Shown in pieces: positions 12,485-33,289 of a stretch of DNA of 64,000 nt. Under the pieces are notes generated by a model. It worked only from the letters and a program-made list of their open reading frames with translations, did no database searches and was not told the DNA's origin. The stretch covers positions 62,001-126,000 of IMG/VR virus record IMGVR_UViG_3300036770_003943. One strand, written 5' to 3'. How positions within the stretch are numbered: the first letter of the stretch is position 1; each line of letters opens with the position of its first letter. The position numbers and the translations under genes are program-made.

Positions 12485-12488
12485 GAAC

Positions 12489-13112: not shown

Positions 13113-13124
13113 GTTGTCCTCTTC

Positions 13125-13919
13125 TTAAATCCAAGCGTTCCAAAAAACTTCTCGGTTATACTGCTCGTATAACTCTAGCCCAATATACTGTACACAATTA
13201 ACTGTGGTTTTTTGAATACTTGATTTGATTTTGTGTAAATCTTTATAGCCGATTGCAACATCAACATAATGCTCTGTTTGTTCAATACGATTAAAATCAT
13301 GCTCAAAATTAGGTAACTCAAAAAAGTCATAGATACGTTTGGTTTGACTCTTGGGACTATTACAAAATCTAGCGTAATCTACAAAAAGTAATCTATCTAA
13401 ATAACCCATTGTAATAGCATCCTTAATGGATCTGTGACTCATACCTAACGGGCCTTCAGGACCTGCTACATAATATGCTCTAGTAGCAATATTACTTTGA
13501 TCTTTAAGATACTGATCGCTTCGAGCATAATACAAAGGATTCTGATTACGTAGACGTTCAAAACTTGTTACAATTTCTGCTGGATTACGCACACAAACAA
13601 GCATTTTTACTTCACGATCAAGTACTGCTTCTAACTGAGCAATTTGACTTACCCAACCTCTGTCTTTATCAAAAATAACTGGCTTATCAATGTGATTGTA
13701 ATAACCATCTAAGGTTCCTTTGAGTACACCTTTTAGTGCTTGATCATTTTGATATTCTCTATTCTGTTCAAAATTACCCCAATTGGCTTGTAAACTACCA
13801 AATACCCCTGACAAACTGCTAACTCCTTCTCCATGAATTTCAGGATTCTGTTTTAGAATATTTGCCAATAGAGTCGAGCCTGATCTTGGTAAACCGGTAA
13901 TAAAATGTAATGTTTTCAT
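13125..13919 (-). CDS. sulfotransferase family protein
   Basis: 5'-PSB motif FITGLPRSGSTLL; 3'-PB-like CVRNPAEIVTS. Confidence 0.85.
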   Translation of the reverse strand: MKTLHFITGLPRSGSTLLANILKQNPEIHGEGVSSLSGVFGSLQANWGNFEQNREYQNDQALKGVLKGTLDGYYNHIDKPVIFDKDRGWVSQIAQLEAVLDREVKMLVCVRNPAEIVTSFERLRNQNPLYYARSDQYLKDQSNIATRAYYVAGPEGPLGMSHRSIKDAITMGYLDRLLFVDYARFCNSPKSQTKRIYDFFELPNFEHDFNRIEQTEHYVDVAIGYKDLHKIKSSIQKTTVNCVQYIGLELYEQYNREVFWNAWI

Positions 13920-13946
13920 AAATCCTCATTAAAGTAGTATATAACT

Positions 13947-13953
13947 TACTTAT
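13947..13953 (-). promoter_or_regulatory. variant late promoter ATAAGTA
   Basis: Upstream of the sulfotransferase RBS (GAGGA). Confidence 0.4.
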
Positions 13954-15078: not shown

Positions 15079-15119
15079 AAAAAAATCAGCTAGTACATTG
15101 TTTATTATACTAGCTGATT
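15079..15119 (-). terminator. Rho-independent terminator after RCC1 gene A
   Basis: 12-bp perfect stem AATCAGCTAGTA/TACTAGCTGATT (15084-15095/15108-15119) followed by a U-run on the minus strand (A7 at 15079-15085). Confidence 0.75.
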
Positions 15120-15143: not shown

Positions 15144-18100
15144 CTAAATTGTTTTTAGTGTTACTGTTTGAGCACCACCTGCACTGGCTGTTAAGTGGTC
15201 GGTGTCGCTGCCAACTTGTACCGGACTACTACGAGTTGTAATTGTTCCATCACCTAGTTGCCCATTGGCGTTGTAACCCCAAGCATATAAATCTCCTGTG
15301 CTTCTAACACCCACTGTGTGCCAAGTACCAGCATCGACTGCGGTCCATGATCCAGAACCAACTTGTGTTGGGGCATCAGCATTTGTTGTAGTACCAAGTC
15401 CTAATTGTCCGTAGTTGTTTCTGCCCCAGGTATATAAACCACTATTAGTTTTAATACCTGCTGTGTGTTGATTGCCTGCGGTGATTGCGGTCCAACTTCC
15501 ACCGCCAGCTACTGCCACCGGACTACTGTAACTAGCTGGCTGCGGTCCAGTAATAGTTGTATTTTCAGCCGGGGTACCAGAACTTGCTAGATTACCGTCC
15601 ATTGGAAGATTGTTGTAATTACTCCAAGCATAAAGTTTACCAGTACTAGTAATGGCCCCATTCACTCCAAAGTGGGTAAAGGCGTTATGGCCTTTTGGTA
15701 CAGCAGTAAATGATACCCCCACAGCAAGCTGTACAGGACTATTTGAGCTGGAAGTATTGTTACCTATCGAACCAAACTGAGTTCTACCCCAAGCATACAA
15801 GGCACCGTCTGGTTGTATGCCTAATAATAATCTGCCTACATAACCAATTGCTGTCCAGCTATCTGTGCCTAACTTAGATAGTGTGTACTGAAAATTGACA
15901 TTATTTATAGTTTGAGTAAATCCTGAGTAATAAAGTTCGCCTGTCGAAGCTAATGCGGCCATACAGCCTATTGCACCTCCGCAGACTGCTGTAAAACTTT
16001 TACCTAAAGATGATCCAATTTGAACAGGACTTGATCTGTTAGTTGATGTGCTAGAAATTCCAATTCCTAAGGCAACACCGTAACCCATTCCCCATAATGT
16101 TCCGTCTGATTTGATAGCCATATTCGCAGCGTCTGAAGATCCAACTTGAATCCAATCGGTGTCTGTGCCTACCTGTACCGGAGTTAGACGGTCTGTGGTA
16201 TCATTATGACCTAATTGCCCTTTATGGTTTTTCCCCCATGTCCAAAGTGTTCCATCAGATTTAATTCCTATAGCACTTCCAGTACTAGCACCTTCACTGA
16301 TGCTTACAATCGACCAGCTTCCAGGCACTTGTGTTGGAGTCGAAACCGATAAGGTGTCACCAAGACCTAATTGTCCTGCGGCATTATTACCCCAGCCCCA
16401 TAAGGTTCCATTTGTTTTTATTGCAAATGCCTGATATTGACCTGAAATTATCTTACTCCAATCACTATCAGTTCCTATTAAGTTTGGCGAGTATCTATCA
16501 GTGGTAGTAATAGGAAGACCTAAATTGTTATAGCTGTTAAACATCGACCATCCCCATAGTCTGCCGCTAGTGGTTATTACGTGAATAGTATCATATTGTA
16601 CTCCAATTGCAGCAAAACTAGCTATGTCAGCTGGTCCAGCAACCTGTGTTGAATCATTTTTACCCCAAGCAAACAGTGTGCCATCTGACTTAATTGCTGC
16701 TGTATGACTACTACCGGCTGCTACTGCTGTCCAACTGCTAGTACCTACCTGTACTGGACTGCTTAAGTTTGTAGTATTTGCTTGTCCTAGTTGTCCAATG
16801 TTATTCAATCCCCAAGCAAACAGGCCGCCGTCCTTGCGTACTGCTACACTATGACTGCCACCAGCTGCTACAGCAGTCCAACTACTAGTGCCTATTTGTA
16901 CTGGGCTACTACGGCTAGTTGTTGTTCCATCACCTAGTCTACCTGTGCCGTTATTACCCCACACAAAAAGTCCGCCATCACTGCGAATGGCCATGCTGTG
17001 AGCATCACCTGCCGATACTGCTGTCCAACTGCTAGTGCCTACCTGTACTGGACTACTTTTTACTGCGCTGGTTCCATCTCCTAGCTGGCCCGAACTGTTA
17101 ACTCCCCAAGCATACAATGTTCCGTCACTGCGAATTGCCAATGTATGATTAGCACCAGTGCTAGCTGATTGCCAAGTTTCAGTGCCGAGTTTAACAGGAC
17201 TTGTTTGAGTTGAAGTTAAATTACCTCCCACTAGGTTTGGTAGCCAGTAGGCATTACCGGAAATTAGTTGGCCTGTATCGTTTATATTGCCGCTTAATCC
17301 ATATGATTCTAACCAACCCCATCCATATAATAAGCCGTCTGATTTAATACCAAAGGTATGTTTAGCATTTATATCAAGGGCATTTTGTCGAATAATAGTC
17401 CAACTACCTGAAATTTGAGTTGGATTACTATTCGCTGTAGTATTGCCTTGGGCTCCTTGACCGTATGAGCCTGCACCCATGTGATAGGCTGTACTGTTAG
17501 TTTTGATTAGATAATTTGCGTGTCTACCTGCTGATACTTTTTGCCAATCTGTATCTGTGCCCACTTGTGTTACTGTGGATCTTGCTGTGGTATCATTTAA
17601 TCCTAACTTCCCGTTAGTATTGTCTCCCCAGGACCATAATGTTCCGTCTGTTCTTACACCAATAGTATGATTAAAGCCTGATGCTATAGCTGACCAGCTT
17701 GCTGTACCTAACTGTACTGGACTAGATACTGATGTTGGTACTGTGCCTACTAGGCCAGTGGCGGTAGCAGTTGACCCGGAAGAGGTACCATCACCAAAAC
17801 TACCACTTATATTATATCCCCAATAATAACCAATTTTATCAGAACCTACAGCCCATCTTGGATTAGCAACATCAGTAAACCTGGTGCTTACTATCGTCCA
17901 GCTAGATGCACCAATCTGTATAGGACTAGTTATATTTTGACCGTAACTACCTGAGTCATCTCCGGTGTAATATGGAGTATAAAAATATCCCCATTTCCAC
18001 AATTTTCCATCAGTAGTGAGGCCGTTTACAGCAGTATAGATACTATTAACATCAGTAGTCGATCTGGCGGTGAATGCACCCACCATTGACCAACTTTTAG

Positions 18101-21100
18101 TATCATCGAGCAGTTGTGGGACAAACCTTCGCGTACGAGCATTTCTAAGCAGTTGACCGTACTCAGACTGACCCCAACCCCATAAACTTCCTACGCTATC
18201 AATAGCAAACGATTGCCATTTTGATGTGTAAGCACGAGTAAAAGTAGGTACACTATCTAATCGTGGACCATCGAGCCAATTAGATGAATTCGCTGAAGAA
18301 TTGTCATTTTTGCCAATATAAGCTCTTGTGGGTGTTGGAACATAATTTCCTTCTGGCCTTGATTGAGCAGGGAACGCACCAAAAATTACAGGATTTGAAA
18401 TATCTGGTTCAGTTGCGGTCAAAGCCCACTCAATCTCTCTACCAGTTGCTCTTGCTTGTGTGGTAAACCATAACACACCAGACTCTGACAGATATAATCC
18501 CATAGAAGGACGACCATATGTTGAATGTGTTCTTGTCGCACTAGCAAATTTCATAGTTGGCTGTGTTCCAATAGCAGCGAATGATGTAATTTGTACTGGG
18601 GTTGTACTACTAACAGGAAAATGTGGAACTACCGATCTTCCGCCCCAAGCCCACATTGTGCCATCTGTTTTAGTACCAATGGTGTGGGTTTCAAAATCAA
18701 CAAGACTATATCTGGGATTTGACTGACCAAGACTTACATGTTTCCAAGTATGTCCTCCCGAAACTAGTACAGGGCTATTCAGAGGAGTAGATGGGTAAGG
18801 ATAAGCATTACCATCACCTAGGCCGCCGCCTTTTCCGCAGCCCCACATATATAAGGAACCATCAGTTCTAATAGCTGCTGAGTGCGCTGCCCCTATGTAC
18901 ACTGCAGTCCAACTGTCTGTACCTACCTGTACTGGACTGCTACGAGCTGTAGTAGTTCCATCGGCTAATCTATTTCCGTATGTGGTACTAGTACCTGTTC
19001 CAGGTTTGCCCCAAGTAAATAGTCCGCCGTCACTACGAACAGCAGCACTAATGCCCATAGTACCGACCGAAATCCAGCTATCCGTGCCGATTTGTGTTGG
19101 ACTTGAACGGTTGGTTGTATCTCCTAATCCTAATTGTCCGACAACATTATTTCCCCACCCAAACAGTGCTCCGTCTGCTCTAATAGCTAAAACTGCGCCG
19201 AAACCAGTACCACTTGTATAACGATTATTACTAGTATGTTCTGTACCACCTATACTAAAGTCACGCCATTTGTCTGCGCCAATACGAGTTGGGGTAGTTG
19301 GGGTAGAAGCATCGTTTAGGCCTAGTTGTCCAAAGTTGTTCGTGCCCCAGCTGTACAGGGCTCCTTCCTCAGTAATACCGATATAGGCCGCATTGTGCTG
19401 CATTACTTTCTTGAAATTCAATGGTCCAGTATCAAATTTTATCAATACTGGACTATCTTTGTTCGAATACCAAACAGTTCCGTCATTTTTAACACCAAGA
19501 AATTGTAGATCACCAGCATCAACATGTTTCCAATAGTCGATAGTTCCTCCCACAGATGGCTGGTTTCTGTTTAATTCTGAAGTACCCCAGGTGTAAAGAT
19601 TTCCTCCTCGAATTCCTACGCTATGACTTGTTGCTGTGCTTATAGCCGTCCAGCTTTCATTGTAGGTGTTGATATTTGGTGTTGGTGTAGTATACACACG
19701 ATCCTCAGTATAAGCCCTGGCGACACCACCTCCCATGGCCCATAGTCTATTATATTCATCTATTAGGCAATTATAGTAGTCTCCAGGAACGAAGGGAGCT
19801 TTGGCGAATTTATATTTTCTAGTACCAATTTGTACAGGACTACTTCTCGAAACTGTATCTCCTAGCCCTAGTTCTCCTATACTGTTTTTACCCCAAGCCC
19901 ACGCATAGCCCGAGGAGTCAATGCCTAGAGCAGTGACAACACTAGGGTTACCACCGCCTATGCTAATCTGTACCCAACTGCCTGTACCTACCTGTACAGG
20001 ACTGCTTCGATCAGTGGTTGTTCCGTCACCTAAAATTCCGTCACTATTTTTACCCCAAGTAAATAAACCACCGTCAGCTCTAATAGCAGCTGAAGTTAAA
20101 TTTACTGTTGCTACTGACAGCCATTTATCAGATCCTACCTGTACAGGACTGCTTATGCTGGTAGTGTTTGCCAGACCTAATTGTCCTGAACTATTATTAC
20201 CCCAAGCCCATAATGCCCCAGCACTATCAATTGCCAATGTACTATCTGATATAGAAATAGCTGCCCAACTTCTTGTTCCTAATTGTACAGGGCTACTACG
20301 ATTTGTTTTGTCGTTCAAACCCAATGGGCCGTATGTAGTATTTCTACCCCAAACAAATAATGCGCCATCTGATCTAATAGCAGCAGAATTTAGATTTCCT
20401 GCAGAAACGCTTACCCAACTATTTCCTGTACCAATTTGAATAGGACTACTTTTTCCTGTGCCGACTGTAGTGCCATCACCAAGTTGGCCATCACTATTTT
20501 GTAAGTTTAATGACCAAGCCCATAGTGTTCCATCGTTTTTGATTCCTAGTGTGTGATTTCTGCCTGCTGATATTTGTTTAAAATTTGAAGCAAATAAGGC
20601 TGGACTAACATTTTTCAGTGTCCAAACTTCGCCATTTTCTTTTAGAATCATTGAATACACGTTCTGACCTTCTACAGTGGCATGAATAATGCCGCTTTCT
20701 TGAACCATAACCGGACTAGACGTGCTATCTCCAGCTAGTCCATTGGCTCTATTGGTACCTGAACCTGTTACAAAAAGTCTATTAGGTTTGCCCCCACTGC
20801 CACCGGCGTTAATATTTGGTGACGCCGATAATAAGAATGTGAATCCGTTACCGGCTGCTACTCCGTTGCTTAACCATTCACCTACGCTGCCGAACGCAGT
20901 TGGTACACTACGATTTGTTGTGTCTCCTAGTCCTAACTGCCCTGAACTGTTTAGTCCCCAAACATAAAATTGTGCGTTCATAGGATAATAAGCAAACACA
21001 TGTTTATTACCAACACTTAATGTTGAATAAAAATCACTGCCAACTTGAACAGGACTTGATCGGTTCGTTGTGTCTCCTAACCCAAGTTGTCCTTGATCAT

Positions 21101-21878: not shown

Positions 21879-21965
21879 AATTTGGCTCCGATTTAGATTA
21901 ATAGTATTTAGCTAAATCGAAGCCATGTCAATTAAATTAAACTGTTTTTAGTGTAATTGTATGAG
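21846..21965. repeat. 120-bp identical block spanning gene B end, intergenic region and gene A start (copy 1; copy 2 at 27493-27612)
   Basis: Direct comparison, offset 5647. Confidence 0.9.
21884..21924 (-). promoter_or_regulatory. RBS-occluding hairpin with late promoter (CTAAATA, 21905-21911) in the loop
   Basis: Minus strand GGCTTCGATTTAG-15 nt-CTAAATCGGAGCC: 13-bp stem with one G-U; GGAG RBS is in the 3' arm. Confidence 0.75.
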
Positions 21966-24900: not shown

Positions 24901-27525
24901 TCCCCATGCCCACAGTTTATCATATTGATCGATGGCAAAATAATAATCGAACCAACCAGCTGCTATATATTTGAATGTTTTTCCTGGTGTTGATTTTTGT
25001 GTTAAAGGTTTATTACTATATGAAGCTTCCCATATAGTTCCATCACTTTTCAAACCCATAAAATACCAATAGGCGCCATTTATTCTACCAGTAAATTCAA
25101 TCTGTTTCCATCTTTCTAAACCGTCAGAAAATACTTCATAATTTTCGCCAGTAACTTTACTATTGCCCCATGCGTATAGTTTTGAGTCATATAAAGCTAA
25201 AGTTTTGTCGTTGGCAGCAGATATAGCTGTCCAAGATTTAGTGGCAATAGGCATAGGAAATCTACCATAAGTTGCCACAGTTGGGCTTGTCCATGTTCCT
25301 AATCGATAACTTCCTGTTATGTGCCCAGCTGTTCCCCAAGCATGTAAAACCCCGGTATGATCAATGGCATATCCACCGCACCTTGTAGCATCTTCAACAA
25401 ACACTGATTTGGCTGCTTTTTTCCAAGTTTTTGTACCGGCACTGCCAACTAATCTAGGACTACTACTAAAATCTACACTTTCGTCCCATCCTAAATTTTG
25501 TGCTGTAGAATCATTTAATCCCCATGCCCATAACTGTCCAGATGTATCTATAGCAAATCCTCCATATGGATTCGAACCTATAGACACCCAACTTCCACCT
25601 CCGCTGATAGATGTTGGACTACTAGTATTGGACGTACCGCCGTTGCCCAATCTTCTAAAAGATCCAGTACCCCACGACCATGCTGTCCAATCATTTCTTA
25701 GTGCTATTGTGTGTTGGGGGCCGCCCACAAACTCAAGCCATTTATCCGATCCTAGCTGTACTGGGCTACTCAGGTCGGTGGTGTTACCTAATCCTAATTG
25801 TCCGTAATTATTTCTACCCCAAGCAAATGTAGCACCATCATTTTTTAAAGCAAATACAATACTGCGATTTGCGTCAGCAACTATATTAGCATATATTTTA
25901 TTCCAATCCGTCCCTGCTCCTATTTGTACTGGGCTTGAAGCATTTGTAGCTGAATTGTTACCAATATCAGTACCTAATCCCCAACCCCATAATGTTCCAT
26001 TAGTCCTAACTCCCCAGGTATTACTGTCTCCTGCTGTAAAATCTCGCCACGAGCCTGCGAGTTGTGTAGGTGTGCTTACGTTACTACCTCCTAAGCCCAG
26101 TCTGCCTGTTGTGTTATCTCCCCAAACCCAAGCTGTTTCATCGTGCTTCAGTGCTGTGGCATGTAATTTCCCTAGTGATATTTTTTTCACATTTGTAAAG
26201 GCCGGAATTTGTGTTGGTACACTTCTATCAGTGGTATCACCTAAACCCAATTTACCATTTGTATTTTTACCCCATGCCCATACCGTCCCATCGCTGTGAA
26301 GAGCCATAGTATAATCTGTACTACCTTCTATGCTAACAAATCCTGGTTCACCTACTATGCTTGCCTTACTCATTGTTGATCCGCCAAGACCACTGGCCAT
26401 ACTGGTACCTGCTCCAAATGCCAACAACTGACCTAGACTATTTTTGGCTATAGTATAATTTTCGCCGCAGGTTACATCAGCAATTGTTTGTGTTATCGAA
26501 GCTACACTGGCCAAAGCAACCGGACTGCTACGATTGGTTGTGTCGGATAATCCTAACTGACCGCTGGAATTCAATCCCCAAGTATACAAAACGTTTCCGG
26601 CTAGCGCAGCCATAAATTGATTACCTACACGTACTTTTGTCCAGTTTGTATTTGATCCTACCTGCTGAGGTGTGCTATAAGAAGTAGTATTTCCTAACCC
26701 TAATTGTCCTGCGGCATTATTACCCCAAGTGTACAATTTTCCGTCATTGGTAATACCTATTGAACTTGCATAATTTGTAGATATTTCTGTCCAACTTAAT
26801 GTTGGGGGAGCAGGATACGCTGCTTGACCTCCTGCGTTGCTACCCCATGTAAATAGTGCGCCATCGCTGCGAATAGCCAAAGTATGATTAAATCCTGATG
26901 CTATAGCTGTCCAACTAGCAGTACCAACTTGTACTGGACTACTACGATTAGTTGTGTCTCCCAAACCAAGTTGCCCTTGATCATTTAATCCCCAAGTAAA
27001 CAGGCCGCCGTCGGCTCTAATAGCCATAACTGAATTTTTTCTACCATTGGATGCCACTGCTGTCCAACTACTAGTGCCAATCTGTACTGGGCTACTAAAA
27101 CTTGAAGAGCCGGATGTACCTTGTCCCAATTGACCATGAAGGTTATTTCCGCCCCAAGCCCATAATGTACCATCATTTCTAATAGCAATGAACCATGTCC
27201 CTGATGCTGACCCTGTGCCTGAGCCTACACCGCCTCCTGTTATAGCAGTCCAACTACTAGTGCCTATTTGTACTGGACTGTTACGACTAGTAGTAGTTCC
27301 ATCACCTAGGCCACCGTTGCTACCATTTCCCCAGGTCCATAATGTACCGTCTGTTTTAATTGCTGCTGCTACTTGGTTTCCTAGTGCTACAGCAGTCCAG
27401 CTTTGTGCTGTATTAATTATACTAGGATCACCTAACTGACCATAGCGATTAGATCCCCATACATACATGAACTTTTCTATAGTTGTAGCCGCTGGTGCTG
27501 GGAATGATAATACAATATCTAACAT
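21937..27525 (-). CDS. giant RCC1/BLIP-II repeat beta-propeller protein B (1862 aa)
   Basis: Same repeats; same MLDIVLSFPAP N-terminus. Confidence 0.9.
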   Translation of the reverse strand: MLDIVLSFPAPAATTIEKFMYVWGSNRYGQLGDPSIINTAQSWTAVALGNQVAAAIKTDGTLWTWGNGSNGGLGDGTTTSRNSPVQIGTSSWTAITGGGVGSGTGSASGTWFIAIRNDGTLWAWGGNNLHGQLGQGTSGSSSFSSPVQIGTSSWTAVASNGRKNSVMAIRADGGLFTWGLNDQGQLGLGDTTNRSSPVQVGTASWTAIASGFNHTLAIRSDGALFTWGSNAGGQAAYPAPPTLSWTEISTNYASSIGITNDGKLYTWGNNAAGQLGLGNTTSYSTPQQVGSNTNWTKVRVGNQFMAALAGNVLYTWGLNSSGQLGLSDTTNRSSPVALASVASITQTIADVTCGENYTIAKNSLGQLLAFGAGTSMASGLGGSTMSKASIVGEPGFVSIEGSTDYTMALHSDGTVWAWGKNTNGKLGLGDTTDRSVPTQIPAFTNVKKISLGKLHATALKHDETAWVWGDNTTGRLGLGGSNVSTPTQLAGSWRDFTAGDSNTWGVRTNGTLWGWGLGTDIGNNSATNASSPVQIGAGTDWNKIYANIVADANRSIVFALKNDGATFAWGRNNYGQLGLGNTTDLSSPVQLGSDKWLEFVGGPQHTIALRNDWTAWSWGTGSFRRLGNGGTSNTSSPTSISGGGSWVSIGSNPYGGFAIDTSGQLWAWGLNDSTAQNLGWDESVDFSSSPRLVGSAGTKTWKKAAKSVFVEDATRCGGYAIDHTGVLHAWGTAGHITGSYRLGTWTSPTVATYGRFPMPIATKSWTAISAANDKTLALYDSKLYAWGNSKVTGENYEVFSDGLERWKQIEFTGRINGAYWYFMGLKSDGTIWEASYSNKPLTQKSTPGKTFKYIAAGWFDYYFAIDQYDKLWAWGNNDQGQLGLGNTTSQATMVQVGNDNWEKVYTGGNTFDTGYPYPPVKQSAAIRKDGALFTWGANSQGQLGLGDTSSVSSPVQVGTASYTMISMALGTMALQSNGTLWAWGDNRHGQLGINDTTTRSSPVQVGASTWTAVSIMERHAAAIRSDGALFTWGDSALGDGGAARSSPVQIGSDSWVAVKATRTGWTSNGHMTYAVKSDNTLWAWGSRLQSSSPYGATPVQINIVGSPVLAQIRSISGQGQVEQVVFHEPNGYAYWMGRAGIITYESRQSEVSSPTILGGFRTQNISPRRMYPMATTQDQSVFGGTNLIFDPNDTTSFTMVSAAKQNLLALSSTGKAYITGRAGNYGVLGNSFYYAYPHFQITQADKTFSKINIRSRSSSPYTHPTAIGITTDGQAFAWGARGYGMMGIATEYAGGTTSPIQLGTGSSYTMISSSHTGTVFLLGTTGVAEGFGTNGSGELGINVTASVGARSPLIGVASTSELSPVQFGTDSWTAVAAGMSHSVGIKSNGTLYTWGSNSSGQLGLGNTTAVSTPTQVGGLTNWQKLSANGYGTMAINTDGALYVWGSNNQAQLGLGDTTNRSSPVQLGSASWILVKGQDAGYSPIREYTFGIQSDNLMYAWGWLGTGAGGVSGEPADVGTLSSGSAYTTPNKVGGALATTSSSTSKLGTDVWKAASAGANHTVAIRTNGTLYAWGLNSSGQLGLGDTTIRSSPVQIGTSSWTAVSAGDAHTVAIRSDGGLFVWGNNGTGRLGDGTATSRSSPVQVGADSWTAVAAGGSHSVAVRKDGGLFAWGLNNVGQLGLSNTTNLSSPVQVGADSWTSVAAGASHTVSVRSDGGLFAWGLNNVGQLGLSNTTNLSSPVQVGADSWTLVTAGNQHTAGIRTNKLLYAWGRNNYGQLGLNDLVDTSSPVQVGTGSWTVVEAGNWHTVGVRSTNRLYAWGYNANGQLGDGTTTTRSSPVQIGSDIDHLTASAGGTHTITLKTV
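22292..22530. repeat. tandem duplication of one RCC1 blade: 92-bp identical copies at 22292-22383 and 22439-22530 (period 147 nt = 49 aa)
   Basis: Direct comparison. Confidence 0.85.
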
Positions 27526-27612
27526 AATTTGGCTCCGATTTAGATTAATAGTATTTAGCTAAATCGAAGCCATGTCAATTAAATTAAACTGTTTTTAGTG
27601 TAATTGTATGAG
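27493..27612. repeat. 120-bp identical block (copy 2 of 21846-21965)
   Basis: Direct comparison. Confidence 0.9.
27531..27571 (-). promoter_or_regulatory. RBS-occluding hairpin with late promoter in the loop (identical to 21884-21924)
   Basis: Identical sequence; TAAATA at 27552-27557. Confidence 0.75.
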
Positions 27613-30600
27613 CACCGCCAGCACTAGCTGTCAAGTGGTCAATATCACTACCTATCTGTACTGGACTGCTGCGAGTATCCACTGTTCCATCACCAAGCTG
27701 GCCGTCATAGTTATATCCCCAAGCATAGAGTGCTCCTGTACTTCTAACTCCCACAGTATGCCAAGTACCAGCTTCGACAGCAGTCCATGAACCAGTGCCA
27801 ACTTGTGCTGGACTACTAGTATCAACTAAATCATTGAGTCCTAGTTGTCCGTAGTTGTTTCGTCCCCAAGCATATAAAATACTGTTTTTGGTAATGCCGG
27901 CTGTGTGCTGATTGCCTGCGGTGACTAAGGTCCAACTATCTGCTCCCACTTGTACTGGACTACTACGAGATGTAGTTGTTCCATCACCTAGTCTACCTGT
28001 GCCGTTATTACCCCATGCAAATAGTGCGCCATCACTACGAATAGCTACATTATGAGATCCACCAGCCGCAATTGCTGTCCAACTATCTGTACCTATTTGT
28101 ACTGGACTTGAACGAACAGTTGTATTACCTTGCCCTAGTTGTCCTGAAGTGTTTATACCCCAAGCAAAAAGACTGCCGTCACTACGTAAAGCTAAACTAT
28201 GGGTTCCGCCTGCCGAAATTGCTGTCCAACTACTAGTGCCTATTTGTACTGGGCTACTACGAGATGTAGCTGTTCCGTCACCTAGTCTACCTGAGCCGTT
28301 ATTACCCCAAGTAAACAGTCCGCCATCACTACGAATAGCCATGCTGTGAGCATCACCTGCTGATACTGCTGTCCAACTACTAGTGCCTACTTGTACTGGA
28401 CTTGAAAGATATGTTGTATTACCTTGTCCTAATTGTCCTGAACTATTATTACCCCAAGTAAACAGTGTGCCATCACTGCGAATGGCTAGGGTATGACTAG
28501 CACCAGCACTAGCTGCTATCCACGTGTCTGATCCTAATTTTATCGGGGTTTTTATAACAGACAGAGAATTTCCAACTAAGTTAGGTAATGTGTAAACAGC
28601 ACCACCTTGTAATTGTCCTAGGTCAGATGTGTTTCCGCTTAATCCATATGATTCTAACCAACCCCATCCATATAATAGGCCGTCTGATTTAATACCAAAA
28701 ACATTTTTAACGTTAGTCCGTAGTGGGTTTACTTTCATCATCGTCCAACTACCTGGAATTTGAGTAGGAGTGCTATTACTACTTTCATTTCCTATCCCCG
28801 ATTGGCCGTAAGTGCCTTGCCCTACATGATAGGCTGTGCCATTAGTTTTGATTAGATAATTTGCGTTTCTACCTGCTGATACTTTTTGCCAATCTGTATC
28901 TGTACCTATTTGTGTTATTAGGGATCTTGCTGTGGTATCACCTAATCCTAACTTCCCGTTAGTATTGTCTCCCCAACCCCACAATGTGCCATTAGTTTTG
29001 ATGCCTAATGTATGATTAACACCTGCCGAAACTGTGGTCCAACTAGCTGTACCCAACTGTTCTGGAGTTGTAGCTCGTGAAAGAGATAATGCTGTAATAG
29101 TTCCGATTCCGCTTGTAGATGTGCTGTTGTTAGTGCCCAATTGTCCGTAATTGTTGTATCCCCAATAATGACCAATTTTGTCTGTAGATATGGCCCACCT
29201 ACTGGCATAGTTTGAAAAATTAAATCTAGTACCAACTGCTAGCCAACTTTGACTTGAGCCGATTTGAACAGGACTCGAACTAGGATGCAGGGGTGCTGAT
29301 GTGCCATCACCTGTAAAATTATTCGCGCGGAGCCACCCCCATCTCCACAATTTTCCATCTGTAGTTATTCCATTTACACCAACGGCTCGACCATAACCAG
29401 CGGTATTGGAAGACGTAAATCCACCTATCATAGACCAGCTCTTAGTTGTATCAATTTGTTGAGGGATAAAGTAACGATAATACTCGTATGCAGGTTTAAA
29501 TAATTCACTTCCGTAACTACTGCCCCACCCCCATAGACTTCCTGCGTTATCAATAGCAAAACATTGCCATAATGATGCGTAAGCACGAGTAAAAGTAGGT
29601 ACACTATCCAATCGCGGGCCATCGGGCCAATTCCAAACGAAACTGGCACTATTGTCATTTTTGCCAATATAAGCTCTGGTGGGTGTTGGAACATAATTTC
29701 CGTCTGGCCTTGATTGAGCAGGGAACGCACCAAAAATTACAGGATTTGAAATAACATTATTGCCACCGGTGTCCCATTCAGTCTCTCTGCCAGTTGCTCT
29801 TTGTTGACTGTTAAACCATAACACACCAGACTCTGACAGATATAAACCCATAGCCTCGGCATCATAACCGCTATTTGTCCTTGATATACTAGCAAATTTC
29901 ATAGTTGGTTGTGTTCCAATAGCAGCAAATGATGTAATTTGTACTGGGGTTGTACTAGCTCCACTAGGAAACCATGATTGTTCTCCTCTCGCGCCCCATA
30001 TCCAAATTGTACCATCTGTTTTAGTACCAACAGTTCGTGTTCCAAAACTAGTATTGCTATATCTCCAATTCGACTGACCAAGACTTACATGTTTCCAAGT
30101 ATGTCCCCCAGCAACTAAAACTGGACTGCTAGTATTAGTCGTTGTTCCGTCACCCAAACCTCCAAGACGATTTAAGCCCCACATATATAAGGAACCATCA
30201 GTTCTAATAGCTGCCGAATGTGCTGCCCCTATGTACACTGCAGTCCAACTGTCTGTACCTACCTGTACTGGACTGCTACGAGCTGTAGTAGTTCCGTCAC
30301 CTAATTGATTGCCAGTACTGGCAGTAACTTTAGGTTTACCCCAAGTAAATAGTCCGCCGTCACTACGAACAGCAGCACTAATGCCCATAGTACCTACCGA
30401 AATCCAGCTATCCGTGCCGATTTGTGTTGGACTTGAGCGATTAGTTGTATCTCCTAATCCTAATTGTCCGACAACATTATTTCCCCACCCAAACAGTGCT
30501 CCGTCTGCTCTAATAGCTAAAACTGCGCCGTAACCAGTACCCGAAACATGAAAACTAACATCATTATGTTCTGTACCACCTATACTAAAGTCACGCCATT

Positions 30601-33223
30601 TGTCTGCGCCAATACGAGTTGGGGTAGTTGGGGTAGAAGCATCGTTTAGGCCTAGTTGTCCAAAGTTGTTCGTGCCCCAACCATATAGTTGCCCATCTTC
30701 TGTTAGACCTATATAGGCCGCATTGTGCTGCATTACTTTCTTGAAATTCAATGGTCCAGTATCAAATTTTATCAATACTGGACTTCTATAACGTGAATAC
30801 CAAACACTTCCGTCATTTTTAACACCAAGAAATTGTAGATCACTAGCATCAACGTGTTTCCAATAGTCGATAGTTCCTCCCACACATGGCTGTTCTCTGG
30901 CTAATTCTGAAGTACCCCAGGTGTAAAGATTTCCTTGATATATTCCAACAGTATGGCTACCGGCAGTACTTACTGTGGTCCAGCCGCTTACTTGTGTTAC
31001 GAAATTTCTAGCTGGGCTAGTATCAACTGCTGATCCGCTTCGGCCAAAGGCCGCATTGCTCCCATTTCCCAAACACCAGGGTCTGTTAAATTCATCTATT
31101 AGCGCAGCATAAGTGCCACCCTGTGCATTAACTTGTCTAGCTAATTTATATTTTCTAGTACCTATCTGTACAGGACTGCTACGATCCGTAGTGTCAGCTA
31201 GACCTAATTGACCTACATCATTTCGTCCCCACCCAAACGCATAGCCATTGATGTCAATTCCTAGGGCACTTACTGGTGTAAAGTTGCTGCCGCCACCTAT
31301 AGAGACCTGAATCCAGCTTCCTGTGCCCACTTGTACTGGACTACTACGATTGGTCGTATCTCCAACACCTAAAATACCAAAAGTATTAGCACCCCAAGTC
31401 CATAAAGTATTATCTGCCCTAATTGCAGCAGTTGTTTGATTCATAGTTATCACACTTAGCCATTTATTAGAGCCGACTTGTACAGGACTACTTAAACTTG
31501 TAGTATTTCCTAGGCCTAATTGGCCTACATCATTTTTTCCCCAAGTCCATAGTGCTCCAGCACTGTCAATGGCAGCTGAATTGTCCGACATATGAACTGC
31601 TGACCAACTTCTTGTTCCTAATTGTACAGGACTGCTACGACTTGTCATATTACCTAAACCTAGCTGTCCCTGTGTATCATTCCTTCCCCATACAAACAAC
31701 GCTCCATCTGCTCTTATAGCTGCGCTAGTGTTATTACCTGCTGATACCAATACCCAACTATTTCCTGTACCAATTTGAATAGGACTACTTTTGCCTGTAC
31801 CCACACTAGTACCATCACCTAGTTGACCGCCAGTATTATCTGCGGTCAATGACCAAGCCCAAAGAGTACCATCATTTTTAAGACCCAAATGATGACTTCG
31901 GCCCGCAGACAATTGCTTAAACCCAGACGCAAAAAGTGTAGGACTAGCTGCTGTAGTCCAAATTTCACCATTCTCTTTTAATACCTGTGTTTTGGTATTT
32001 AGACCGTTCATTCCAATATCAATTATACCGCCTTCTTGTATCATAACCGGACTGCTAACATTATCTCCATTTAGGCCGCTTGCTTTATTTGTGCCCGAAC
32101 CAGTAGCGTATAAACGATTAGAAATTCCGTCAGTACCGCCGAGGTTGGATTGGCCTGTACCACTAATGAGCAAAGAAAATCCATTACCAGCTACTACTCC
32201 GTTGCTTAACCATTCATTTGCGCCGCCTAACGCAGTTGGTACACTACGATTTGTTGTGTCTCCTAGTCCTAACTGCCCTGAACTGTTTAGTCCCCAAACA
32301 TAAAGTTGTGCGCCTACAGCAGAATAAGCAAACACATGTTTATTACCAATACTTAATGTTGAATAAAAATCACTACTACTACCGACTTGAACAGGACTTG
32401 ATCGGTTCGTTGTGTCTCCTAACCCAAGTTGTCCTTGATCATTTAATCCCCAAGCATAGAGATATCCAATATTACCATATCCTATATCAGTAATACCAAA
32501 AGTGCTTCCATATGCTGATTCTAAGACTGACCAGCTACGAACTTGGCCTAACGGATAACTCAATTGATTTTCTGCGTTTAATCCCCAACCCATTAGTTTT
32601 CCATCTGATTTTATACCAACAGTATGACTATGTCCCATACTCACAGTGGTCCAACTGCCTGCAATTGCTACTGGACTGCTACGATTGGTCGTATCTCCGA
32701 GCCCTAGATTGTTTACGGCATTGCCGCCCCAAGTAAACAATCGACCAGCTACGTCAATGGCAGCAGTTGATAAATTGTTGGCATTGACCATAGTCCAGCT
32801 GCTGGTCCCTACTTGTACTGGACTTGAACGATTGATAGTATCATCAAGCCCTAACTGCCCTGAACTGTTTAGTCCCCAGGCAAATAAGGCACTATCGCTA
32901 CGTATAGCTACTGTGTGGCTACCACCGGCCGCTACCGAAGTCCAACTATCAGTACCAACTTGTACAGGGCTGTAGTAGTTTAATGCGATATTCAAACCTA
33001 ACAAACCAACGTTTGCATGATTACCCCAGGTCCATAACGTTCCATCGCTGCGTATAGCTGCAGCATGTGAATGTCCTGATGATATAGACGTCCAACTTTG
33101 TGCTACGTCAATAGAAGACGGATCACCAAGTTCACCGCTGTTATTACTTCCCCATACATATAAAAATTTTTCAACAGTAGTAGCTGTTGCTGGTGCAGGA
33201 AATGACAATACAATATCTAACAT
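27584..33223 (-). CDS. giant RCC1/BLIP-II repeat beta-propeller protein C (1879 aa)
   Basis: Same repeats; long near-identical stretches shared with A, C-terminus shared with B. Confidence 0.9.
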   Translation of the reverse strand: MLDIVLSFPAPATATTVEKFLYVWGSNNSGELGDPSSIDVAQSWTSISSGHSHAAAIRSDGTLWTWGNHANVGLLGLNIALNYYSPVQVGTDSWTSVAAGGSHTVAIRSDSALFAWGLNSSGQLGLDDTINRSSPVQVGTSSWTMVNANNLSTAAIDVAGRLFTWGGNAVNNLGLGDTTNRSSPVAIAGSWTTVSMGHSHTVGIKSDGKLMGWGLNAENQLSYPLGQVRSWSVLESAYGSTFGITDIGYGNIGYLYAWGLNDQGQLGLGDTTNRSSPVQVGSSSDFYSTLSIGNKHVFAYSAVGAQLYVWGLNSSGQLGLGDTTNRSVPTALGGANEWLSNGVVAGNGFSLLISGTGQSNLGGTDGISNRLYATGSGTNKASGLNGDNVSSPVMIQEGGIIDIGMNGLNTKTQVLKENGEIWTTAASPTLFASGFKQLSAGRSHHLGLKNDGTLWAWSLTADNTGGQLGDGTSVGTGKSSPIQIGTGNSWVLVSAGNNTSAAIRADGALFVWGRNDTQGQLGLGNMTSRSSPVQLGTRSWSAVHMSDNSAAIDSAGALWTWGKNDVGQLGLGNTTSLSSPVQVGSNKWLSVITMNQTTAAIRADNTLWTWGANTFGILGVGDTTNRSSPVQVGTGSWIQVSIGGGSNFTPVSALGIDINGYAFGWGRNDVGQLGLADTTDRSSPVQIGTRKYKLARQVNAQGGTYAALIDEFNRPWCLGNGSNAAFGRSGSAVDTSPARNFVTQVSGWTTVSTAGSHTVGIYQGNLYTWGTSELAREQPCVGGTIDYWKHVDASDLQFLGVKNDGSVWYSRYRSPVLIKFDTGPLNFKKVMQHNAAYIGLTEDGQLYGWGTNNFGQLGLNDASTPTTPTRIGADKWRDFSIGGTEHNDVSFHVSGTGYGAVLAIRADGALFGWGNNVVGQLGLGDTTNRSSPTQIGTDSWISVGTMGISAAVRSDGGLFTWGKPKVTASTGNQLGDGTTTARSSPVQVGTDSWTAVYIGAAHSAAIRTDGSLYMWGLNRLGGLGDGTTTNTSSPVLVAGGHTWKHVSLGQSNWRYSNTSFGTRTVGTKTDGTIWIWGARGEQSWFPSGASTTPVQITSFAAIGTQPTMKFASISRTNSGYDAEAMGLYLSESGVLWFNSQQRATGRETEWDTGGNNVISNPVIFGAFPAQSRPDGNYVPTPTRAYIGKNDNSASFVWNWPDGPRLDSVPTFTRAYASLWQCFAIDNAGSLWGWGSSYGSELFKPAYEYYRYFIPQQIDTTKSWSMIGGFTSSNTAGYGRAVGVNGITTDGKLWRWGWLRANNFTGDGTSAPLHPSSSPVQIGSSQSWLAVGTRFNFSNYASRWAISTDKIGHYWGYNNYGQLGTNNSTSTSGIGTITALSLSRATTPEQLGTASWTTVSAGVNHTLGIKTNGTLWGWGDNTNGKLGLGDTTARSLITQIGTDTDWQKVSAGRNANYLIKTNGTAYHVGQGTYGQSGIGNESSNSTPTQIPGSWTMMKVNPLRTNVKNVFGIKSDGLLYGWGWLESYGLSGNTSDLGQLQGGAVYTLPNLVGNSLSVIKTPIKLGSDTWIAASAGASHTLAIRSDGTLFTWGNNSSGQLGQGNTTYLSSPVQVGTSSWTAVSAGDAHSMAIRSDGGLFTWGNNGSGRLGDGTATSRSSPVQIGTSSWTAISAGGTHSLALRSDGSLFAWGINTSGQLGQGNTTVRSSPVQIGTDSWTAIAAGGSHNVAIRSDGALFAWGNNGTGRLGDGTTTSRSSPVQVGADSWTLVTAGNQHTAGITKNSILYAWGRNNYGQLGLNDLVDTSSPAQVGTGSWTAVEAGTWHTVGVRSTGALYAWGYNYDGQLGDGTVDTRSSPVQIGSDIDHLTASAGGAHTITLKTV

Positions 33224-33251: not shown

Positions 33252-33259
33252 TATTTATA
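33252..33259 (-). promoter_or_regulatory. T4 late promoter TATAAATA (perfect consensus)
   Basis: Exact consensus upstream of RBS GGAG and ATG 33223. Confidence 0.8.
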
Positions 33260-33261
33260 AA

Positions 33262-33289
33262 AATTAAAACCCCTTAAAGGGGTTTTTTT
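33262..33289 (-). terminator. Rho-independent terminator (possibly bidirectional)
   Basis: AAAACCCCT-TAA-AGGGGTTTT 9-bp inverted repeat at 33266-33286. Confidence 0.75.

What the first reader, a model, noticed from the sequence alone, without database searches (positions are those of the whole stretch)
15144..33223. Three giant RCC1 paralogues with constant scaffolds and short hypervariable patches
Seen: all start MLDIVLSFPAP. A and C share near-identical DNA (e.g. 19235-19349 = 30565-30679, 115 bp; 19381-19454 = 30711-30784) interrupted by same-length, fully divergent patches (TSNNRYTSGTGF vs NDVSFHVSGTGY). B and C share the C-terminus and a 120-bp identical junction. Variable segments are rich in Y/W/F/R. 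Inference: an antibody-like repertoire of propeller adhesins, with scaffolds homogenised by gene conversion and loops diversified; the identical junctions allow array expansion, contraction and chimeras.
Basis: partly seen in the sequence, partly recalled or inferred. Interest (0 to 1): 0.65.

Follow-up and report, generated by a model that had tools for sequence, protein, structure and literature searches.

The report
Gene-converted giant RCC1 propeller array, jumbo phage
Three neighbouring giant beta-propeller genes of an uncultured jumbo phage keep copying short stretches of their scaffolds onto one another while the loops on one face of each propeller stay completely different, which fits a set of related but distinct binding proteins on the virus particle rather than an actively mutating, antibody-like system.

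Summary
Three tandem minus-strand genes, C 27584-33223, B 21937-27525 and A 15144-21878, encode proteins of 35, 35 and 42 RCC1 blades, that is 5, 5 and 6 seven-bladed propellers. They lie in the tail-fibre region of a 232-kb jumbo myovirus contig.

The A/C codon alignment falls into three classes:
- Homogenised blocks: dS 0.036.
- Old background: dS 1.4, dN/dS 0.13.
- Saturated patches: 33% nucleotide identity at every codon position, with indels.

Exact runs of 25 nt or more number 28, against 2.9 expected. In the shared last propeller all three pairings alternate (z = -9.7), so conversion is reticulate.

Divergent patches sit almost only in the D-A and B-C loops, which lie on one propeller face.

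The patches are not hypervariable in the population. Contigs from three other metagenomes, 98-99.8% identical to A, carry at least 17 of them essentially unchanged. I found no reverse transcriptase, no adenine bias and no donor cassettes.

B shares only the 11-residue leader and the last propeller. Only Tyr (with Asn and Ser) is enriched in the patches, not Trp or Phe.

The 120-nt identical junction is confirmed and hides a hairpin over the ribosome-binding site. Cultured Rak2-like coliphages have analogous RCC1 arrays whose products are found in virions.

Verdict: a new variant of a known kind. The adhesin role is inferred.

The parts
27584..33223 (-). Gene C: first gene of the array, 1879 aa, 35 RCC1 blades (5 seven-bladed propellers)
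   Evidence: ORF list and translation. Pfam RCC1/RLD. 35 blade-HMM hits. AF2 models of aa 700-1085 (pTM 0.81) and aa 1-362 (pTM 0.85). Foldseek best matches are UVR8, HERC2 RLD and RCC1.
21937..27525 (-). Gene B: 1862 aa, 35 blades. It shares only the leader and the last propeller with A and C
   Evidence: Per-propeller identity to A and C is 32-56% in propellers 1-4 and 74% in the last one.
15144..21878 (-). Gene A: 2244 aa, 42 blades (6 propellers), collinear with C
   Evidence: Codon alignment with C.
15504..16643 (-). A-specific insertion of about 380 aa (seven extra blades, A aa ~1746-2125) inside the region that corresponds to the last propeller of B and C
   Evidence: Alignment gap and blade count. 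It is only 35-44% identical to any other propeller of the array, so it is not a recent internal duplication.
18228..19605 (-). Mosaic zone of A (aa ~758-1217): near-identical blocks shared with C, interrupted by saturated loop patches
   Evidence: Exact runs, codon view and HMM segmentation.
29579..30935 (-). Mosaic zone of C, the counterpart of 18228-19605
21846..21965 (-). 120-nt block identical to 27493-27612: last 29 nt of B including its stop codon, the 58-nt spacer, and the first 33 nt of A (leader MLDIVLSFPAP)
27493..27612 (-). 120-nt block identical to 21846-21965: end of C, spacer, start of B
21879..21936 (-). B-A spacer with a 14-bp hairpin (GGCUUCGAUUUAG...CUAAAUCGGAGCC). It pairs the Shine-Dalgarno sequence, and an outer stem pairs the start codon of A. 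The same sequence lies at 27526-27583 in front of B
   Evidence: RNA fold: -23.6 kcal/mol, z = -6.2, 0 of 200 shuffles fold as well. A sigma-70-like TTGACA-17-AATACT lies in both spacers.
33252..33286 (-). Terminator of the upstream gene (33266-33286), then TATAAATA (33252-33259) 29 nt upstream of the ATG of C: the likely start of the C-B-A transcription unit
   Evidence: The motif is not enriched in the window (3 found, 8.6 expected), so the promoter call is a lead only.
15084..15119 (-). Strong terminator-like hairpin (14 pairs plus a T run) just downstream of A: the likely end of the unit
15144..16100 (-). Last-propeller region of A, with counterparts at 21937-22900 in B and 27584-28550 in C. 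Tracts identical between A and B, A and C, and B and C alternate here
   Evidence: Three-way codon alignment and runs test on 322 informative sites. Coordinates are approximate.

Best explanation
The locus is one late transcription unit, C-B-A, in the tail-fibre region of a jumbo myovirus. It encodes three giant proteins made only of RCC1-type seven-bladed propellers (5, 5 and 6 of them) behind a short, flexible, conserved N-terminal peptide.

Shown:
- A and C are old paralogues (silent sites near saturation) under purifying selection on the blades.
- Short tracts of about 30-190 nt (longest exact run 115 nt) have recently been copied between paralogues. This happened between A and C over about 540 codons, and among all three genes in the last propeller and at the gene junctions.
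- The segments that stay fully different lie almost only in the D-A and B-C loops. In a four-stranded meander blade these loops point to the same face.
- These segments are stable between strains.

Inferred:
- The proteins are virion-associated surface proteins (fibres or 'hairs'). Their 16 propeller faces are distinct ligand-binding surfaces for host cell-surface structures.
- Homology-dependent recombination keeps the frameworks, the common N-terminal peptide and the common last propeller (the likely attachment or assembly parts) uniform.
- It does not erase the face loops, because strand exchange stops at saturated, indel-bearing heterology, because convertants that lose a specificity are selected against, or both.

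The result is a fixed family of related specificities, comparable to conserved motifs flanking hypervariable segments in T-even gp38 adhesins. It is not a somatic-type diversity generator.
For: Phage and context:
- The major capsid protein is 67-69% identical to those of jumbo phages Phosso, PA5oct and Vibrio 2.275.O.
- Neighbouring genes are tail fibres, portal and capsid.
- Terminators bracket the array.

Fold:
- Pfam RCC1/RLD. Blade counts are 42, 35 and 35.
- AF2 pTM is 0.81 and 0.85. Foldseek matches UVR8, HERC2 and RCC1 at E about 1e-24.

Three divergence classes:
- A three-state HMM gives logL -2046 against -2287 for one state.
- Homogenised blocks: dS 0.036, dN 0.008. Background: dS 1.42, dN 0.19. 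Saturated patches: 0.33, 0.37 and 0.32 identity at codon positions 1, 2 and 3, against a random value of 0.26.

Conversion:
- 28 exact runs of 25 nt or more against 2.9 expected.
- The three-way runs test gives z = -9.7, with AB, AC and BC tracts of up to 22-23 informative sites.
- The junctions are identical over 120 nt.

One face:
- Saturated residues make up 25% of D-A loops. Inserted residues in the B-C loop are 29-70% saturated.
- Strands A and D, the A-B loop and the C-D turn hold 2-4%, strand B 6% and strand C 9%. Fisher p = 9e-22.
- The patches fall in coil and low-pLDDT segments of the model.

Stability and age of the patches:
- Patches are unchanged on contigs 98-99.8% identical to A from three other metagenomes.
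- Patch identity is 0.1-0.44 whatever the flank.

Leader:
- Residues 1-16 are predicted unstructured.
- The same kind of leader is seen across metagenomic relatives. In the 14-gene RCC1 array of an Asteriusvirus coliphage all genes start MLPF(V/A)RM..YGN and have conserved spacers.

Virion association in relatives:
- GAP32 gp1 (PMC5259590).
- phAPEC6 gp003 and gp005 are listed in the structural proteome. That phage bears unexplained 'hairy' fibres (PMC7247149).

Other:
- Tyr, Asn and Ser are enriched in the patches.
Against: - There is no direct evidence that these proteins are in the virion or bind anything. The closest cultured-phage RCC1 proteins are only about 25-38% identical.
- Saturation at all codon positions is exactly what unconstrained loops would show at dS 1.4, so selection for different loops is not demonstrated. 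dN/dS cannot be estimated in the patches.
- Long top-face loops are more variable in related protein pairs generally, but the contrast there is modest (24-30% against 17%). Part of the pattern may be mere structural tolerance.
- The HMM classes are defined from the same differences that are then summarised, which is partly circular.
- The face assignment rests on blade topology and DSSP, not on coordinates.
- The contig is a metagenome assembly. Identical runs of up to 120 nt make the phasing of patches along each gene uncertain. Logan's own contig of the likely source run is chimeric across the 115-nt block.
Confidence: 0.55

Rival explanations
1. Neutral loops plus homology-limited conversion. 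The proteins need only intact propeller frameworks. The long D-A and B-C loops are unconstrained and have drifted to saturation. Recombination copies whatever is still similar and stops at heterology. On this reading the mosaic is a by-product and there is no repertoire of specificities.
For: - The patches show equal, near-random identity at all three codon positions and carry indels. This is the expectation for dN/dS about 1 at dS of 1.4 or more.
- Patch identity does not depend on the flank.
- About half of the top-face loops inside the mosaic zone were converted together with their flanks.
- Top loops are the more variable parts in the wider family too.
Against: - Tyr is enriched 2.5-fold in the patches, which is unusual for unconstrained coil.
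- The patches are confined to one face, while the loops of the other face are as conserved as the strands.
- The phage maintains about 18 kb of such genes in its fibre module.
- No patch differences accumulate between strains at 98-99.8% identity, although the time span is short.
Confidence: 0.27
2. Active targeted diversification: a diversity-generating retroelement or another mutator rewrites the loop patches, so they are truly hypervariable.
For: - Sharp boundaries between identical and fully different DNA.
- Neighbouring fibre genes carry the Mtd_N domain known from the Bordetella phage DGR target.
- The record is only about 65% complete, so a reverse transcriptase could lie outside it.
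Against: - No PF00078 match at E <= 1 in the 232 kb held.
- Differences hit all four bases and include indels; they are not adenine-specific.
- No template copy of any patch occurs elsewhere in the record; the best matches are 10-19 nt chance hits.
- The patches are unchanged in three other metagenomes.
- Mtd_N is only the N-terminal attachment motif of the fibres.
Confidence: 0.03
3. Assembly artefact: the mosaic arises because a metagenome assembler switched paths between strains or paralogues.
For: - The record is a metagenome contig.
- All identical runs are 120 nt or shorter, below common maximum k values.
- Logan's k=31 contig of the best-holding run is C-type at 18960-19234 and A-type at 19350-19513.
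Against: - Path switching can permute which patch sits in which gene. It cannot create blocks that are identical next to patches that are saturated, because both versions must exist in the reads.
- Error-free Logan contigs of the likely source run reproduce long stretches of A (0 differences over 250-781 nt).
- Three other metagenomes hold the same sequences.
- The reading frames stay open over 5.6-6.7 kb, with exact multiples of seven blades.
Confidence: 0.05
4. The proteins are not surface binders. They could be internal head or DNA-condensing proteins, as was suggested for phAPEC6, or proteins that act inside the host cell.
For: - The phAPEC6 authors proposed a DNA-ordering role for its RCC1-like virion proteins (PMC7247149).
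- Eukaryotic RCC1 binds chromatin and Ran (established knowledge).
Against: - The genes lie between tail-fibre genes, not in the head module.
- Face-specific loop divergence between paralogues is hard to reconcile with binding a uniform ligand such as DNA.
- The proposal in the paper is explicitly speculative.
Confidence: 0.1

Closest known systems
Tandem RCC1-like gene arrays of Rak2-like jumbo coliphages (Asteriusvirus: 121Q, PBECO4, phAPEC6, vB_Ec-M-J; also GAP32 gp1)
   Same: - They are jumbo myoviruses with head-to-tail arrays of RCC1 propeller genes on one strand.
- Every copy starts with the same short hydrophobic leader: MLPF(V/A)RM..YGN there, MLDIVLSFPAP here.
- The intergenic spacers are conserved and contain a hairpin and a ribosome-binding site.
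- Members were detected in virions by mass spectrometry (PMC5259590; PMC7247149).
- The function is unknown in both cases.
   Different: - There, 6-14 single-propeller genes of about 375-395 aa. Here, 16 propellers fused into three proteins of 1862-2244 aa.
- There, only the leader and spacer are shared at DNA level (longest exact runs 20-40 nt). Here, scaffold tracts inside the genes are homogenised.
- Protein identity to this locus is only about 25%.
- That array lies apart from the fibre genes, next to a 'virion structural protein'.
gp38 adhesins of T-even phages: hypervariable segments between conserved glycine-rich motifs
   Same: - A conserved structural core alternates with short segments that carry the specificity.
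- The conserved motifs have been proposed as sites where recombination swaps specificity segments (PMC3157838 and its reference to Tetart et al. 1998).
   Different: - The fold is unrelated and the protein is small, with four variable segments. It is a single gene per phage, compared between phages.
- Here the comparison is between paralogues in one genome, with dozens of loops on 16 propellers, and a receptor-binding role is not shown.
Diversity-generating retroelements (Bordetella phage BPP-1 Mtd)
   Same: Phage tropism proteins with a constant scaffold and a variable binding surface. Mtd_N domains occur in neighbouring fibre genes.
   Different: No reverse transcriptase, no template repeat and no adenine-specific changes. 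The patches are stable between strains.
Concerted evolution with spared specificity regions in multigene families (general population-genetic model of gene conversion balanced by selection)
   Same: Silent-site identity in the frameworks, saturated divergence in binding regions, and reticulate tracts between several paralogues.
   Different: As far as my two literature searches went, this has not been described for phage RCC1 proteins or for multi-propeller proteins.
Giant multi-RCC1 proteins of uncultured phage-like contigs from freshwater and other metagenomes
   Same: - Thousands of relatives of 1100-3300 aa exist, many with an M-L-[LI]-x-[ED]-x-L-L type leader.
- Tandem pairs or trios occur, with ORFs of up to 5218 aa.
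   Different: - They are at most 47% identical to this locus.
- The seven other tandem arrays examined show no inter-paralogue tracts of 90% identity or more beyond 41 nt. The fine mosaic is so far particular to this phage.

Membership tests
RCC1 / RCC1-like domain (Pfam PF00415, PF13540, PF25390) | Repeats scoring above the curated Pfam thresholds | tested here: met
   PF25390 scores 801-919 bits and PF00415 scores 607-666 bits in all three proteins. All 70 PF00415 matches in the genome fall inside these three genes.
RCC1 / RCC1-like domain (Pfam PF00415, PF13540, PF25390) | Seven-bladed beta-propeller of four-stranded blades | tested here: met
   Blade counts are 42, 35 and 35, all multiples of seven. 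AF2 pTM is 0.81 and 0.85 with four strands per repeat. Foldseek matches UVR8, HERC2 RLD and RCC1 with TM 0.62-0.67 and E down to 1e-24.
RCC1 / RCC1-like domain (Pfam PF00415, PF13540, PF25390) | Guanine-nucleotide exchange or chromatin binding, as in eukaryotic RCC1 | not testable with these tools
   Sequence identity to RCC1 is about 20%. No functional inference is drawn.
Phage RCC1 tandem arrays (Rak2-like type) | Head-to-tail RCC1 genes with a common N-terminal leader and conserved spacers | tested here: met
   This locus. Asteriusvirus array L058.
Phage RCC1 tandem arrays (Rak2-like type) | Product present in the virion | not testable with these tools
   Known only for GAP32 gp1 and phAPEC6 gp003/gp005.
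Diversity-generating retroelement target | Reverse transcriptase gene in the element | tested here: not met
   No PF00078 match at E <= 1 in the 232-kb record. The record is about 65% complete, so absence from the whole genome is not proven.
Diversity-generating retroelement target | Template repeat nearly identical to the variable region, with differences at adenines only | tested here: not met
   No second copy of any patch exists in the record. Differences involve all bases and indels.
Diversity-generating retroelement target | Variable region differs between closely related genomes | tested here: not met
   At least 17 patches are unchanged on contigs 98-99.8% identical to A from three other metagenomes.
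Gene-conversion (concerted-evolution) mosaic | Silent-site identity in tracts, far above the paralogue background | tested here: met
   dS 0.036 against 1.42. Run-length excess.
Gene-conversion (concerted-evolution) mosaic | Clustered, conflicting phylogenetic signal among three or more copies | tested here: met
   The 322 informative sites split 107 AB, 85 AC and 130 BC. They form 130 runs against 212 +/- 8 expected (minimum 181 in 5000 shuffles).
gp38-type adhesin (hypervariable segments / glycine-rich motifs) | Homology to gp38, location at the fibre tip | not tested
   No gp38 family appeared in the Pfam scan of these proteins; the PHROG scans covered only neighbouring genes. The resemblance is one of organisation only.
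Invertible shufflon-type fibre switch | Alternative segments in opposite orientation flanked by inverted repeats, with a recombinase | tested here: not met
   All three genes and every gene around them are on the same strand. No recombinase was found among the neighbours scanned. I ran no dedicated inverted-repeat search.

The most novel reading that the evidence does not exclude
The conserved blade scaffolds act as built-in recombination sites. Through them, loop 'cassettes' are reshuffled between the three paralogues and between co-infecting relatives. The phage population would then explore combinations of roughly two hundred face loops on 16 propellers. This would be a recombinational, template-free way of generating new multi-loop binding faces on a scale far beyond gp38, possibly tuned further by the adjacent sulfotransferase and kinase genes acting on the Tyr-rich loops. 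The contigs of other metagenomes that combine A-type and C-type patches would then be real recombinants rather than assembly chimeras.
Probability: 0.15. Interest if true: 0.75.

Novelty: new variant of a known kind. Interest (0 to 1): 0.5.

Why it matters
RCC1-like genes occur in multiple copies in jumbo phages, and in thousands of giant versions in metagenomes. Their products are found in virions, yet nobody knows what they do; the only published guess is DNA condensation.

This locus gives a testable lead. The parts kept uniform are the leader peptide, the blade frameworks and the last propeller. The parts kept different are the loops of one propeller face. That is the signature expected of a family of binding modules on a common mount.

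If it holds, these proteins are candidates for the unexplained 'hairs' of jumbo phages and for host-range determinants that current receptor-binding-protein predictors miss.

The locus is also a clean natural example of short-tract gene conversion in a phage genome, with three rate classes that differ forty-fold or more at silent sites.

Tried and rejected
- **Close orthologues, to see whether patches vary between phages.** None was found. IMG/VR gave 35% identity or less, JGI metagenome contigs 38% or less, the 5.8-billion protein index 47% or less, and the GenBank phage collection gave no DNA match and 38% or less at protein level.

- **Read-level variation.** Only Logan contigs were available, not raw reads.
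  - They are short and chimeric across identical blocks. X1 record 4 has 29 differences where pure C would have 64.
  - The apparent recombinant contigs in X2 and X3 were therefore rejected as evidence for loop reshuffling.
  - The many 'joints' were not interpreted, because at 85% likeness other RCC1 repeats map there.

- **DGR:** rejected.

- **Donor cassettes for the patches elsewhere in the genome:** none.

- **T4-type late promoter.** TATAAATA sits upstream of C but is not enriched in the window (3 found, 8.6 expected). It is kept only as a lead.

- **Antisense ORFs inside the genes** (for example 18895-19221 on the + strand). They have no counterpart at the homologous place in C and were dismissed as products of composition.

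- **All-against-all BLASTP of the 121 relatives.** One script call returned nothing and was repeated.

- **dN/dS in the patches.** It cannot be estimated, because pS is 0.75, at the saturation limit.

- **Tools and restrictions.**
  - Read laying was given 5951 bases.
Full report
**What is there**

The region holds three head-to-tail ORFs on the minus strand. In order of transcription they are C (27584-33223, 1879 aa), B (21937-27525, 1862 aa) and A (15144-21878, 2244 aa). All three score far above the Pfam thresholds for RCC1 repeats and the RCC1-like domain, and nothing else.

The window is bases 62001-126000 of a 231,776-bp IMG/VR virus record that CheckV rates about 65% complete. All 70 RCC1 matches in that record fall inside these three genes.

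The neighbours are phage structural genes:
- Upstream: tail-fibre proteins (one with an Mtd_N domain, one with the endosialidase-chaperone domain), then the major head protein and the portal.
- Downstream: a sulfotransferase, a methyltransferase-like protein and a P-loop kinase.

The capsid protein is 67-69% identical to those of jumbo myoviruses Phosso, PA5oct and Vibrio phage 2.275.O. This is an uncultured jumbo phage, and the array sits in its fibre module.

A terminator and a TATAAATA box precede C. A strong terminator follows A. The three genes therefore look like one transcription unit.

**Checking the observation**

19235-19349 equals 30565-30679 (115 nt) and 19381-19454 equals 30711-30784. 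The B->A and C->B junctions are identical over 120 nt, from 87 nt upstream of the ATG to codon 11.

A and C share 28 exact runs of 25 nt or more. Shuffling the codon columns gives a mean of 2.9 and a maximum of 12. The longest run is 115 nt against a shuffled mean of 31.

Three details are wrong or overstated:
- B is not a third copy of the same scaffold. It is 32-56% identical to A and C in propellers 1-4 and resembles them only in the leader and in the last propeller.
- Many patches differ in length.
- Of Y/W/F/R, only Tyr is clearly enriched (2.5x), together with Asn and Ser. Trp is depleted.

**Architecture**

A blade profile built from the canonical 49-residue repeats finds 42 blades in A and 35 each in B and C, which is six and five seven-bladed propellers.

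A's extra seven blades (about aa 1746-2125) are inserted within the region that corresponds to the last propeller of B and C. They are no closer than 44% to any other propeller, so they are not a recent duplication.

AlphaFold models of C 700-1085 (pTM 0.81) and C 1-362 (pTM 0.85) give four strands per repeat.

The first 16 residues, which include the shared MLDIVLSFPAP, are predicted without structure and with pLDDT under 50. The leader is therefore probably a free peptide, not a propeller strand.

**Three rate classes**

A three-state hidden Markov model on the A/C codon alignment fits far better than one state (logL -2046 against -2287).

| Class | Codons | Silent sites | Replacement sites |
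|---|---|---|---|
| Homogenised | 541 | dS 0.036 | dN 0.008 |
| Background | 1000 | dS 1.42 | dN 0.19 |
| Saturated | 324 | pS 0.75, at the saturation limit | pN 0.63 |

The background class shows old paralogues under purifying selection. The saturated class has 33, 37 and 32% identity at codon positions 1, 2 and 3, against a random expectation of 26%, and it carries indels.

The classes are defined from the same differences that are then summarised, so the numbers describe the pattern and do not test it. The trimodality itself is supported by the likelihood and by the histogram of 8-codon windows.

Identity at silent sites cannot come from protein-level selection. The homogenised blocks are recent copies.

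**Conversion is reticulate**

All three genes align in the last propeller. There, codon-identical tracts alternate between A=B, A=C and B=C.

The 322 informative sites split 107 AB, 85 AC and 130 BC. They form 130 runs, where shuffling gives 212 +/- 8 with a minimum of 181 in 5000 shuffles (z = -9.7). Single tracts carry up to 22-23 informative sites.

This needs several independent exchanges among all three copies.

**Where the divergent patches lie**

I mapped every residue to the blade profile. Saturated residues make up 25% of the D-A loop, peaking at profile positions 14-18 and in the insertions there. Inserted residues in the B-C loop are 29-70% saturated.

The other elements are far lower: 2-4% in strands A and D, the A-B loop and the C-D turn, 6% in strand B and 9% in strand C. 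Top-face loops against bottom-face loops give 295/1322 against 12/373, Fisher p = 9e-22.

In a four-stranded meander, successive connections alternate sides. The D-A and B-C loops therefore share one face. This is an inference from topology, because I could not read coordinates.

In the model of C 700-1085 the patches fall in coil segments, several with low confidence. The patches are thus exposed loops of one face, not buried.

**Are the patches hypervariable?**

No, not in the sense of ongoing change.

- Contigs from three other metagenomes (aquaculture and freshwater, two other studies) are 98-99.8% identical to gene A. They span at least 17 patches with 0-4 differences per contig overall.
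- Patches that adjoin freshly converted blocks are as saturated (0.11-0.44 identity) as patches in old background. None is half-diverged, so they did not re-diverge after conversion. They were left out of it.
- The differences hit all bases and include indels.
- No reverse transcriptase is found in the 232 kb held.
- No second copy of any patch exists in the record.

A DGR or similar mutator is therefore very unlikely, although a third of the genome is unseen.

**What the reads cannot tell**

Only Logan contigs (k = 31) were on offer. In the likely source run, one contig is C-type at 18960-19234 and A-type at 19350-19513. It shows 29 differences from A where pure C would show 64.

Such contigs switch paralogue inside the 115-nt identical block. 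The contigs of X2 and X3 that combine A-type and C-type patches therefore cannot be taken as recombinants.

For the same reason, the phasing of patches along A and C in the IMG/VR contig is not fully secure wherever identical runs approach read length. The existence of the blocks and the patches is secure.

**Relatives**

Giant multi-RCC1 proteins are abundant in metagenomes: 4247 hits among the 8000 candidates scored, none above 47% identity. Many begin with a similar short hydrophobic leader. Tandem pairs and trios occur on other contigs, with ORFs of up to 5218 aa. None of the seven arrays I checked shows inter-paralogue tracts of 90% identity or more beyond 41 nt.

In related pairs from different samples, top-face loops are again the most variable parts, but only moderately so (24-30% against 17% for bottom loops). 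This cautions that loop tolerance alone explains part of the pattern.

The best-characterised parallel is in cultured Rak2-like coliphages. Phage vB_Ec-M-J carries 14 tandem single-propeller RCC1 genes. Each begins MLPF(V/A)RM..YGN. They are separated by conserved spacers with a hairpin, a promoter-like box and a ribosome-binding site.

The literature records the following:
- Such multi-copy sets occur in 121Q, PBECO4 and phAPEC6.
- GAP32 gp1 and phAPEC6 gp003/gp005 are in the virion proteome.
- These phages bear unexplained hair-like fibres.
- Only a speculative DNA-condensation role has been offered (PMC5259590, PMC7247149).

**The junction**

The 58-nt spacer in front of A and B folds into a 14-bp hairpin that pairs the Shine-Dalgarno sequence. 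An outer stem pairs the stop region of the upstream gene with the start codon (-23.6 kcal/mol, z = -6.2). The upstream region of C has the same ribosome-binding site but no hairpin.

This suggests that B and A are translated when ribosomes finishing the upstream gene open the stem. That is an inference.

The identity of the junction and leader at DNA level, here and in the coliphage array, shows that this part is kept uniform in such arrays.

**How it most likely works**

Shown:
- An array of old paralogues.
- Recent short-tract conversion among all three.
- Saturated divergence confined to one propeller face.
- Stability of that divergence between strains.

Inferred:
- The proteins are on the virion surface. 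The common leader and the common last propeller serve mounting or assembly.
- The 16 faces are distinct binding surfaces.
- Conversion spares them because strand exchange stops at saturated, indel-bearing heterology, because homogenised variants lose a useful specificity, or both.

The organisation recalls the gp38 adhesins of T-even phages, where conserved glycine-rich motifs frame hypervariable specificity segments (PMC3157838). There is no homology to gp38.

The main rival is that the loops are simply unconstrained and the mosaic is a by-product. The data at hand (equal saturation at all codon positions) cannot exclude this. Tyr enrichment and the strict one-face pattern speak mildly against it.

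**Verdict**

- Gene conversion and exposed one-face loops are supported.
- 'Hypervariable' and 'antibody-like' are not supported.
- The adhesin role is plausible but untested.
- Against what is known (RCC1 arrays in jumbo phages, motif-framed variable segments in phage adhesins, concerted evolution in gene families), this is a new variant of a known kind. It gives a concrete, testable hypothesis for an abundant family of unknown function.

Noticed in passing
window 21879-21936 and 27526-27583: The 58-nt spacers before A and B fold into a 14-bp hairpin that buries the Shine-Dalgarno sequence and, with an outer stem, the start codon (-23.6 kcal/mol, z = -6.2). The first gene, C, has the same ribosome-binding site without the hairpin. 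This suggests translational coupling or an RNA-processing site.
   Followed up: partly
window 11016-15062 and 1594-2190: A run of modification-type enzymes lies directly downstream of the array: an unknown 369-aa protein, a sulfotransferase (13125-13919), a methyltransferase-like protein (12489-13112), a P-loop/APS-kinase-like kinase (11651-12484) and DUF6445 (11016-11654). A 2OG-Fe(II) oxygenase lies further on (1594-2190). Given the Tyr-rich loops, sulfation of virion proteins or of a glycan is a lead; I did not test it.
   Followed up: partly
window 2240-3634, 3644-5218, 5221-5559: A second tandem paralogue family: three adjacent genes whose products start MFILD(S/T)T.K or MKLLILDSTTK. The two large ones match phrog_2295 (unknown function); the third was not scanned.
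   Followed up: no
window 5556-8795, 10433-10951, 33923-35332, 37420-42453: Four fibre-type proteins share an N-terminal attachment motif of the type ...RG..a..P....GEL.... Pfam Mtd_N matches two of them (10433-10951 and 33923-35332); the other two were judged by eye. The phage probably carries several different fibres on a common mount.
   Followed up: partly
L058 9021-26582 (Escherichia phage vB_Ec-M-J, OQ718158.1): 14 tandem single-propeller RCC1 genes all begin MLPF(V/A)RM..YGN. Most spacers (~70 nt) are conserved and hold a GCCAGTACT...AGTACTGGC hairpin, a TTAAATATAGTATAAT box and AAGGAGG. Only the leader is shared at DNA level (exact runs 32-40 nt).
   Followed up: partly
L016 5069-20725; also L011, L015, L018, L019: Metagenome contigs carry tandem RCC1 ORFs of 3499-5218 aa that all start MSITRS(A/S)PVQ, each preceded by a shorter RCC1 ORF that abuts or overlaps it by up to 4 nt.
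   Followed up: no
window 18839-19513 (Logan contig of run X1): The k=31 contig of the likely source run switches from the C-type to the A-type sequence inside the 115-nt identical block. This is a warning that Logan contigs cannot phase paralogue mosaics.
   Followed up: yes
window 19424-19453 = 30754-30783: A 12-bp inverted repeat (GTCCAGTATTGA...TTTGATACTGGAC) lies inside a homogenised coding block of both A and C. The terminator scan picked it up; it is probably coincidental to the coding sequence.
   Followed up: no
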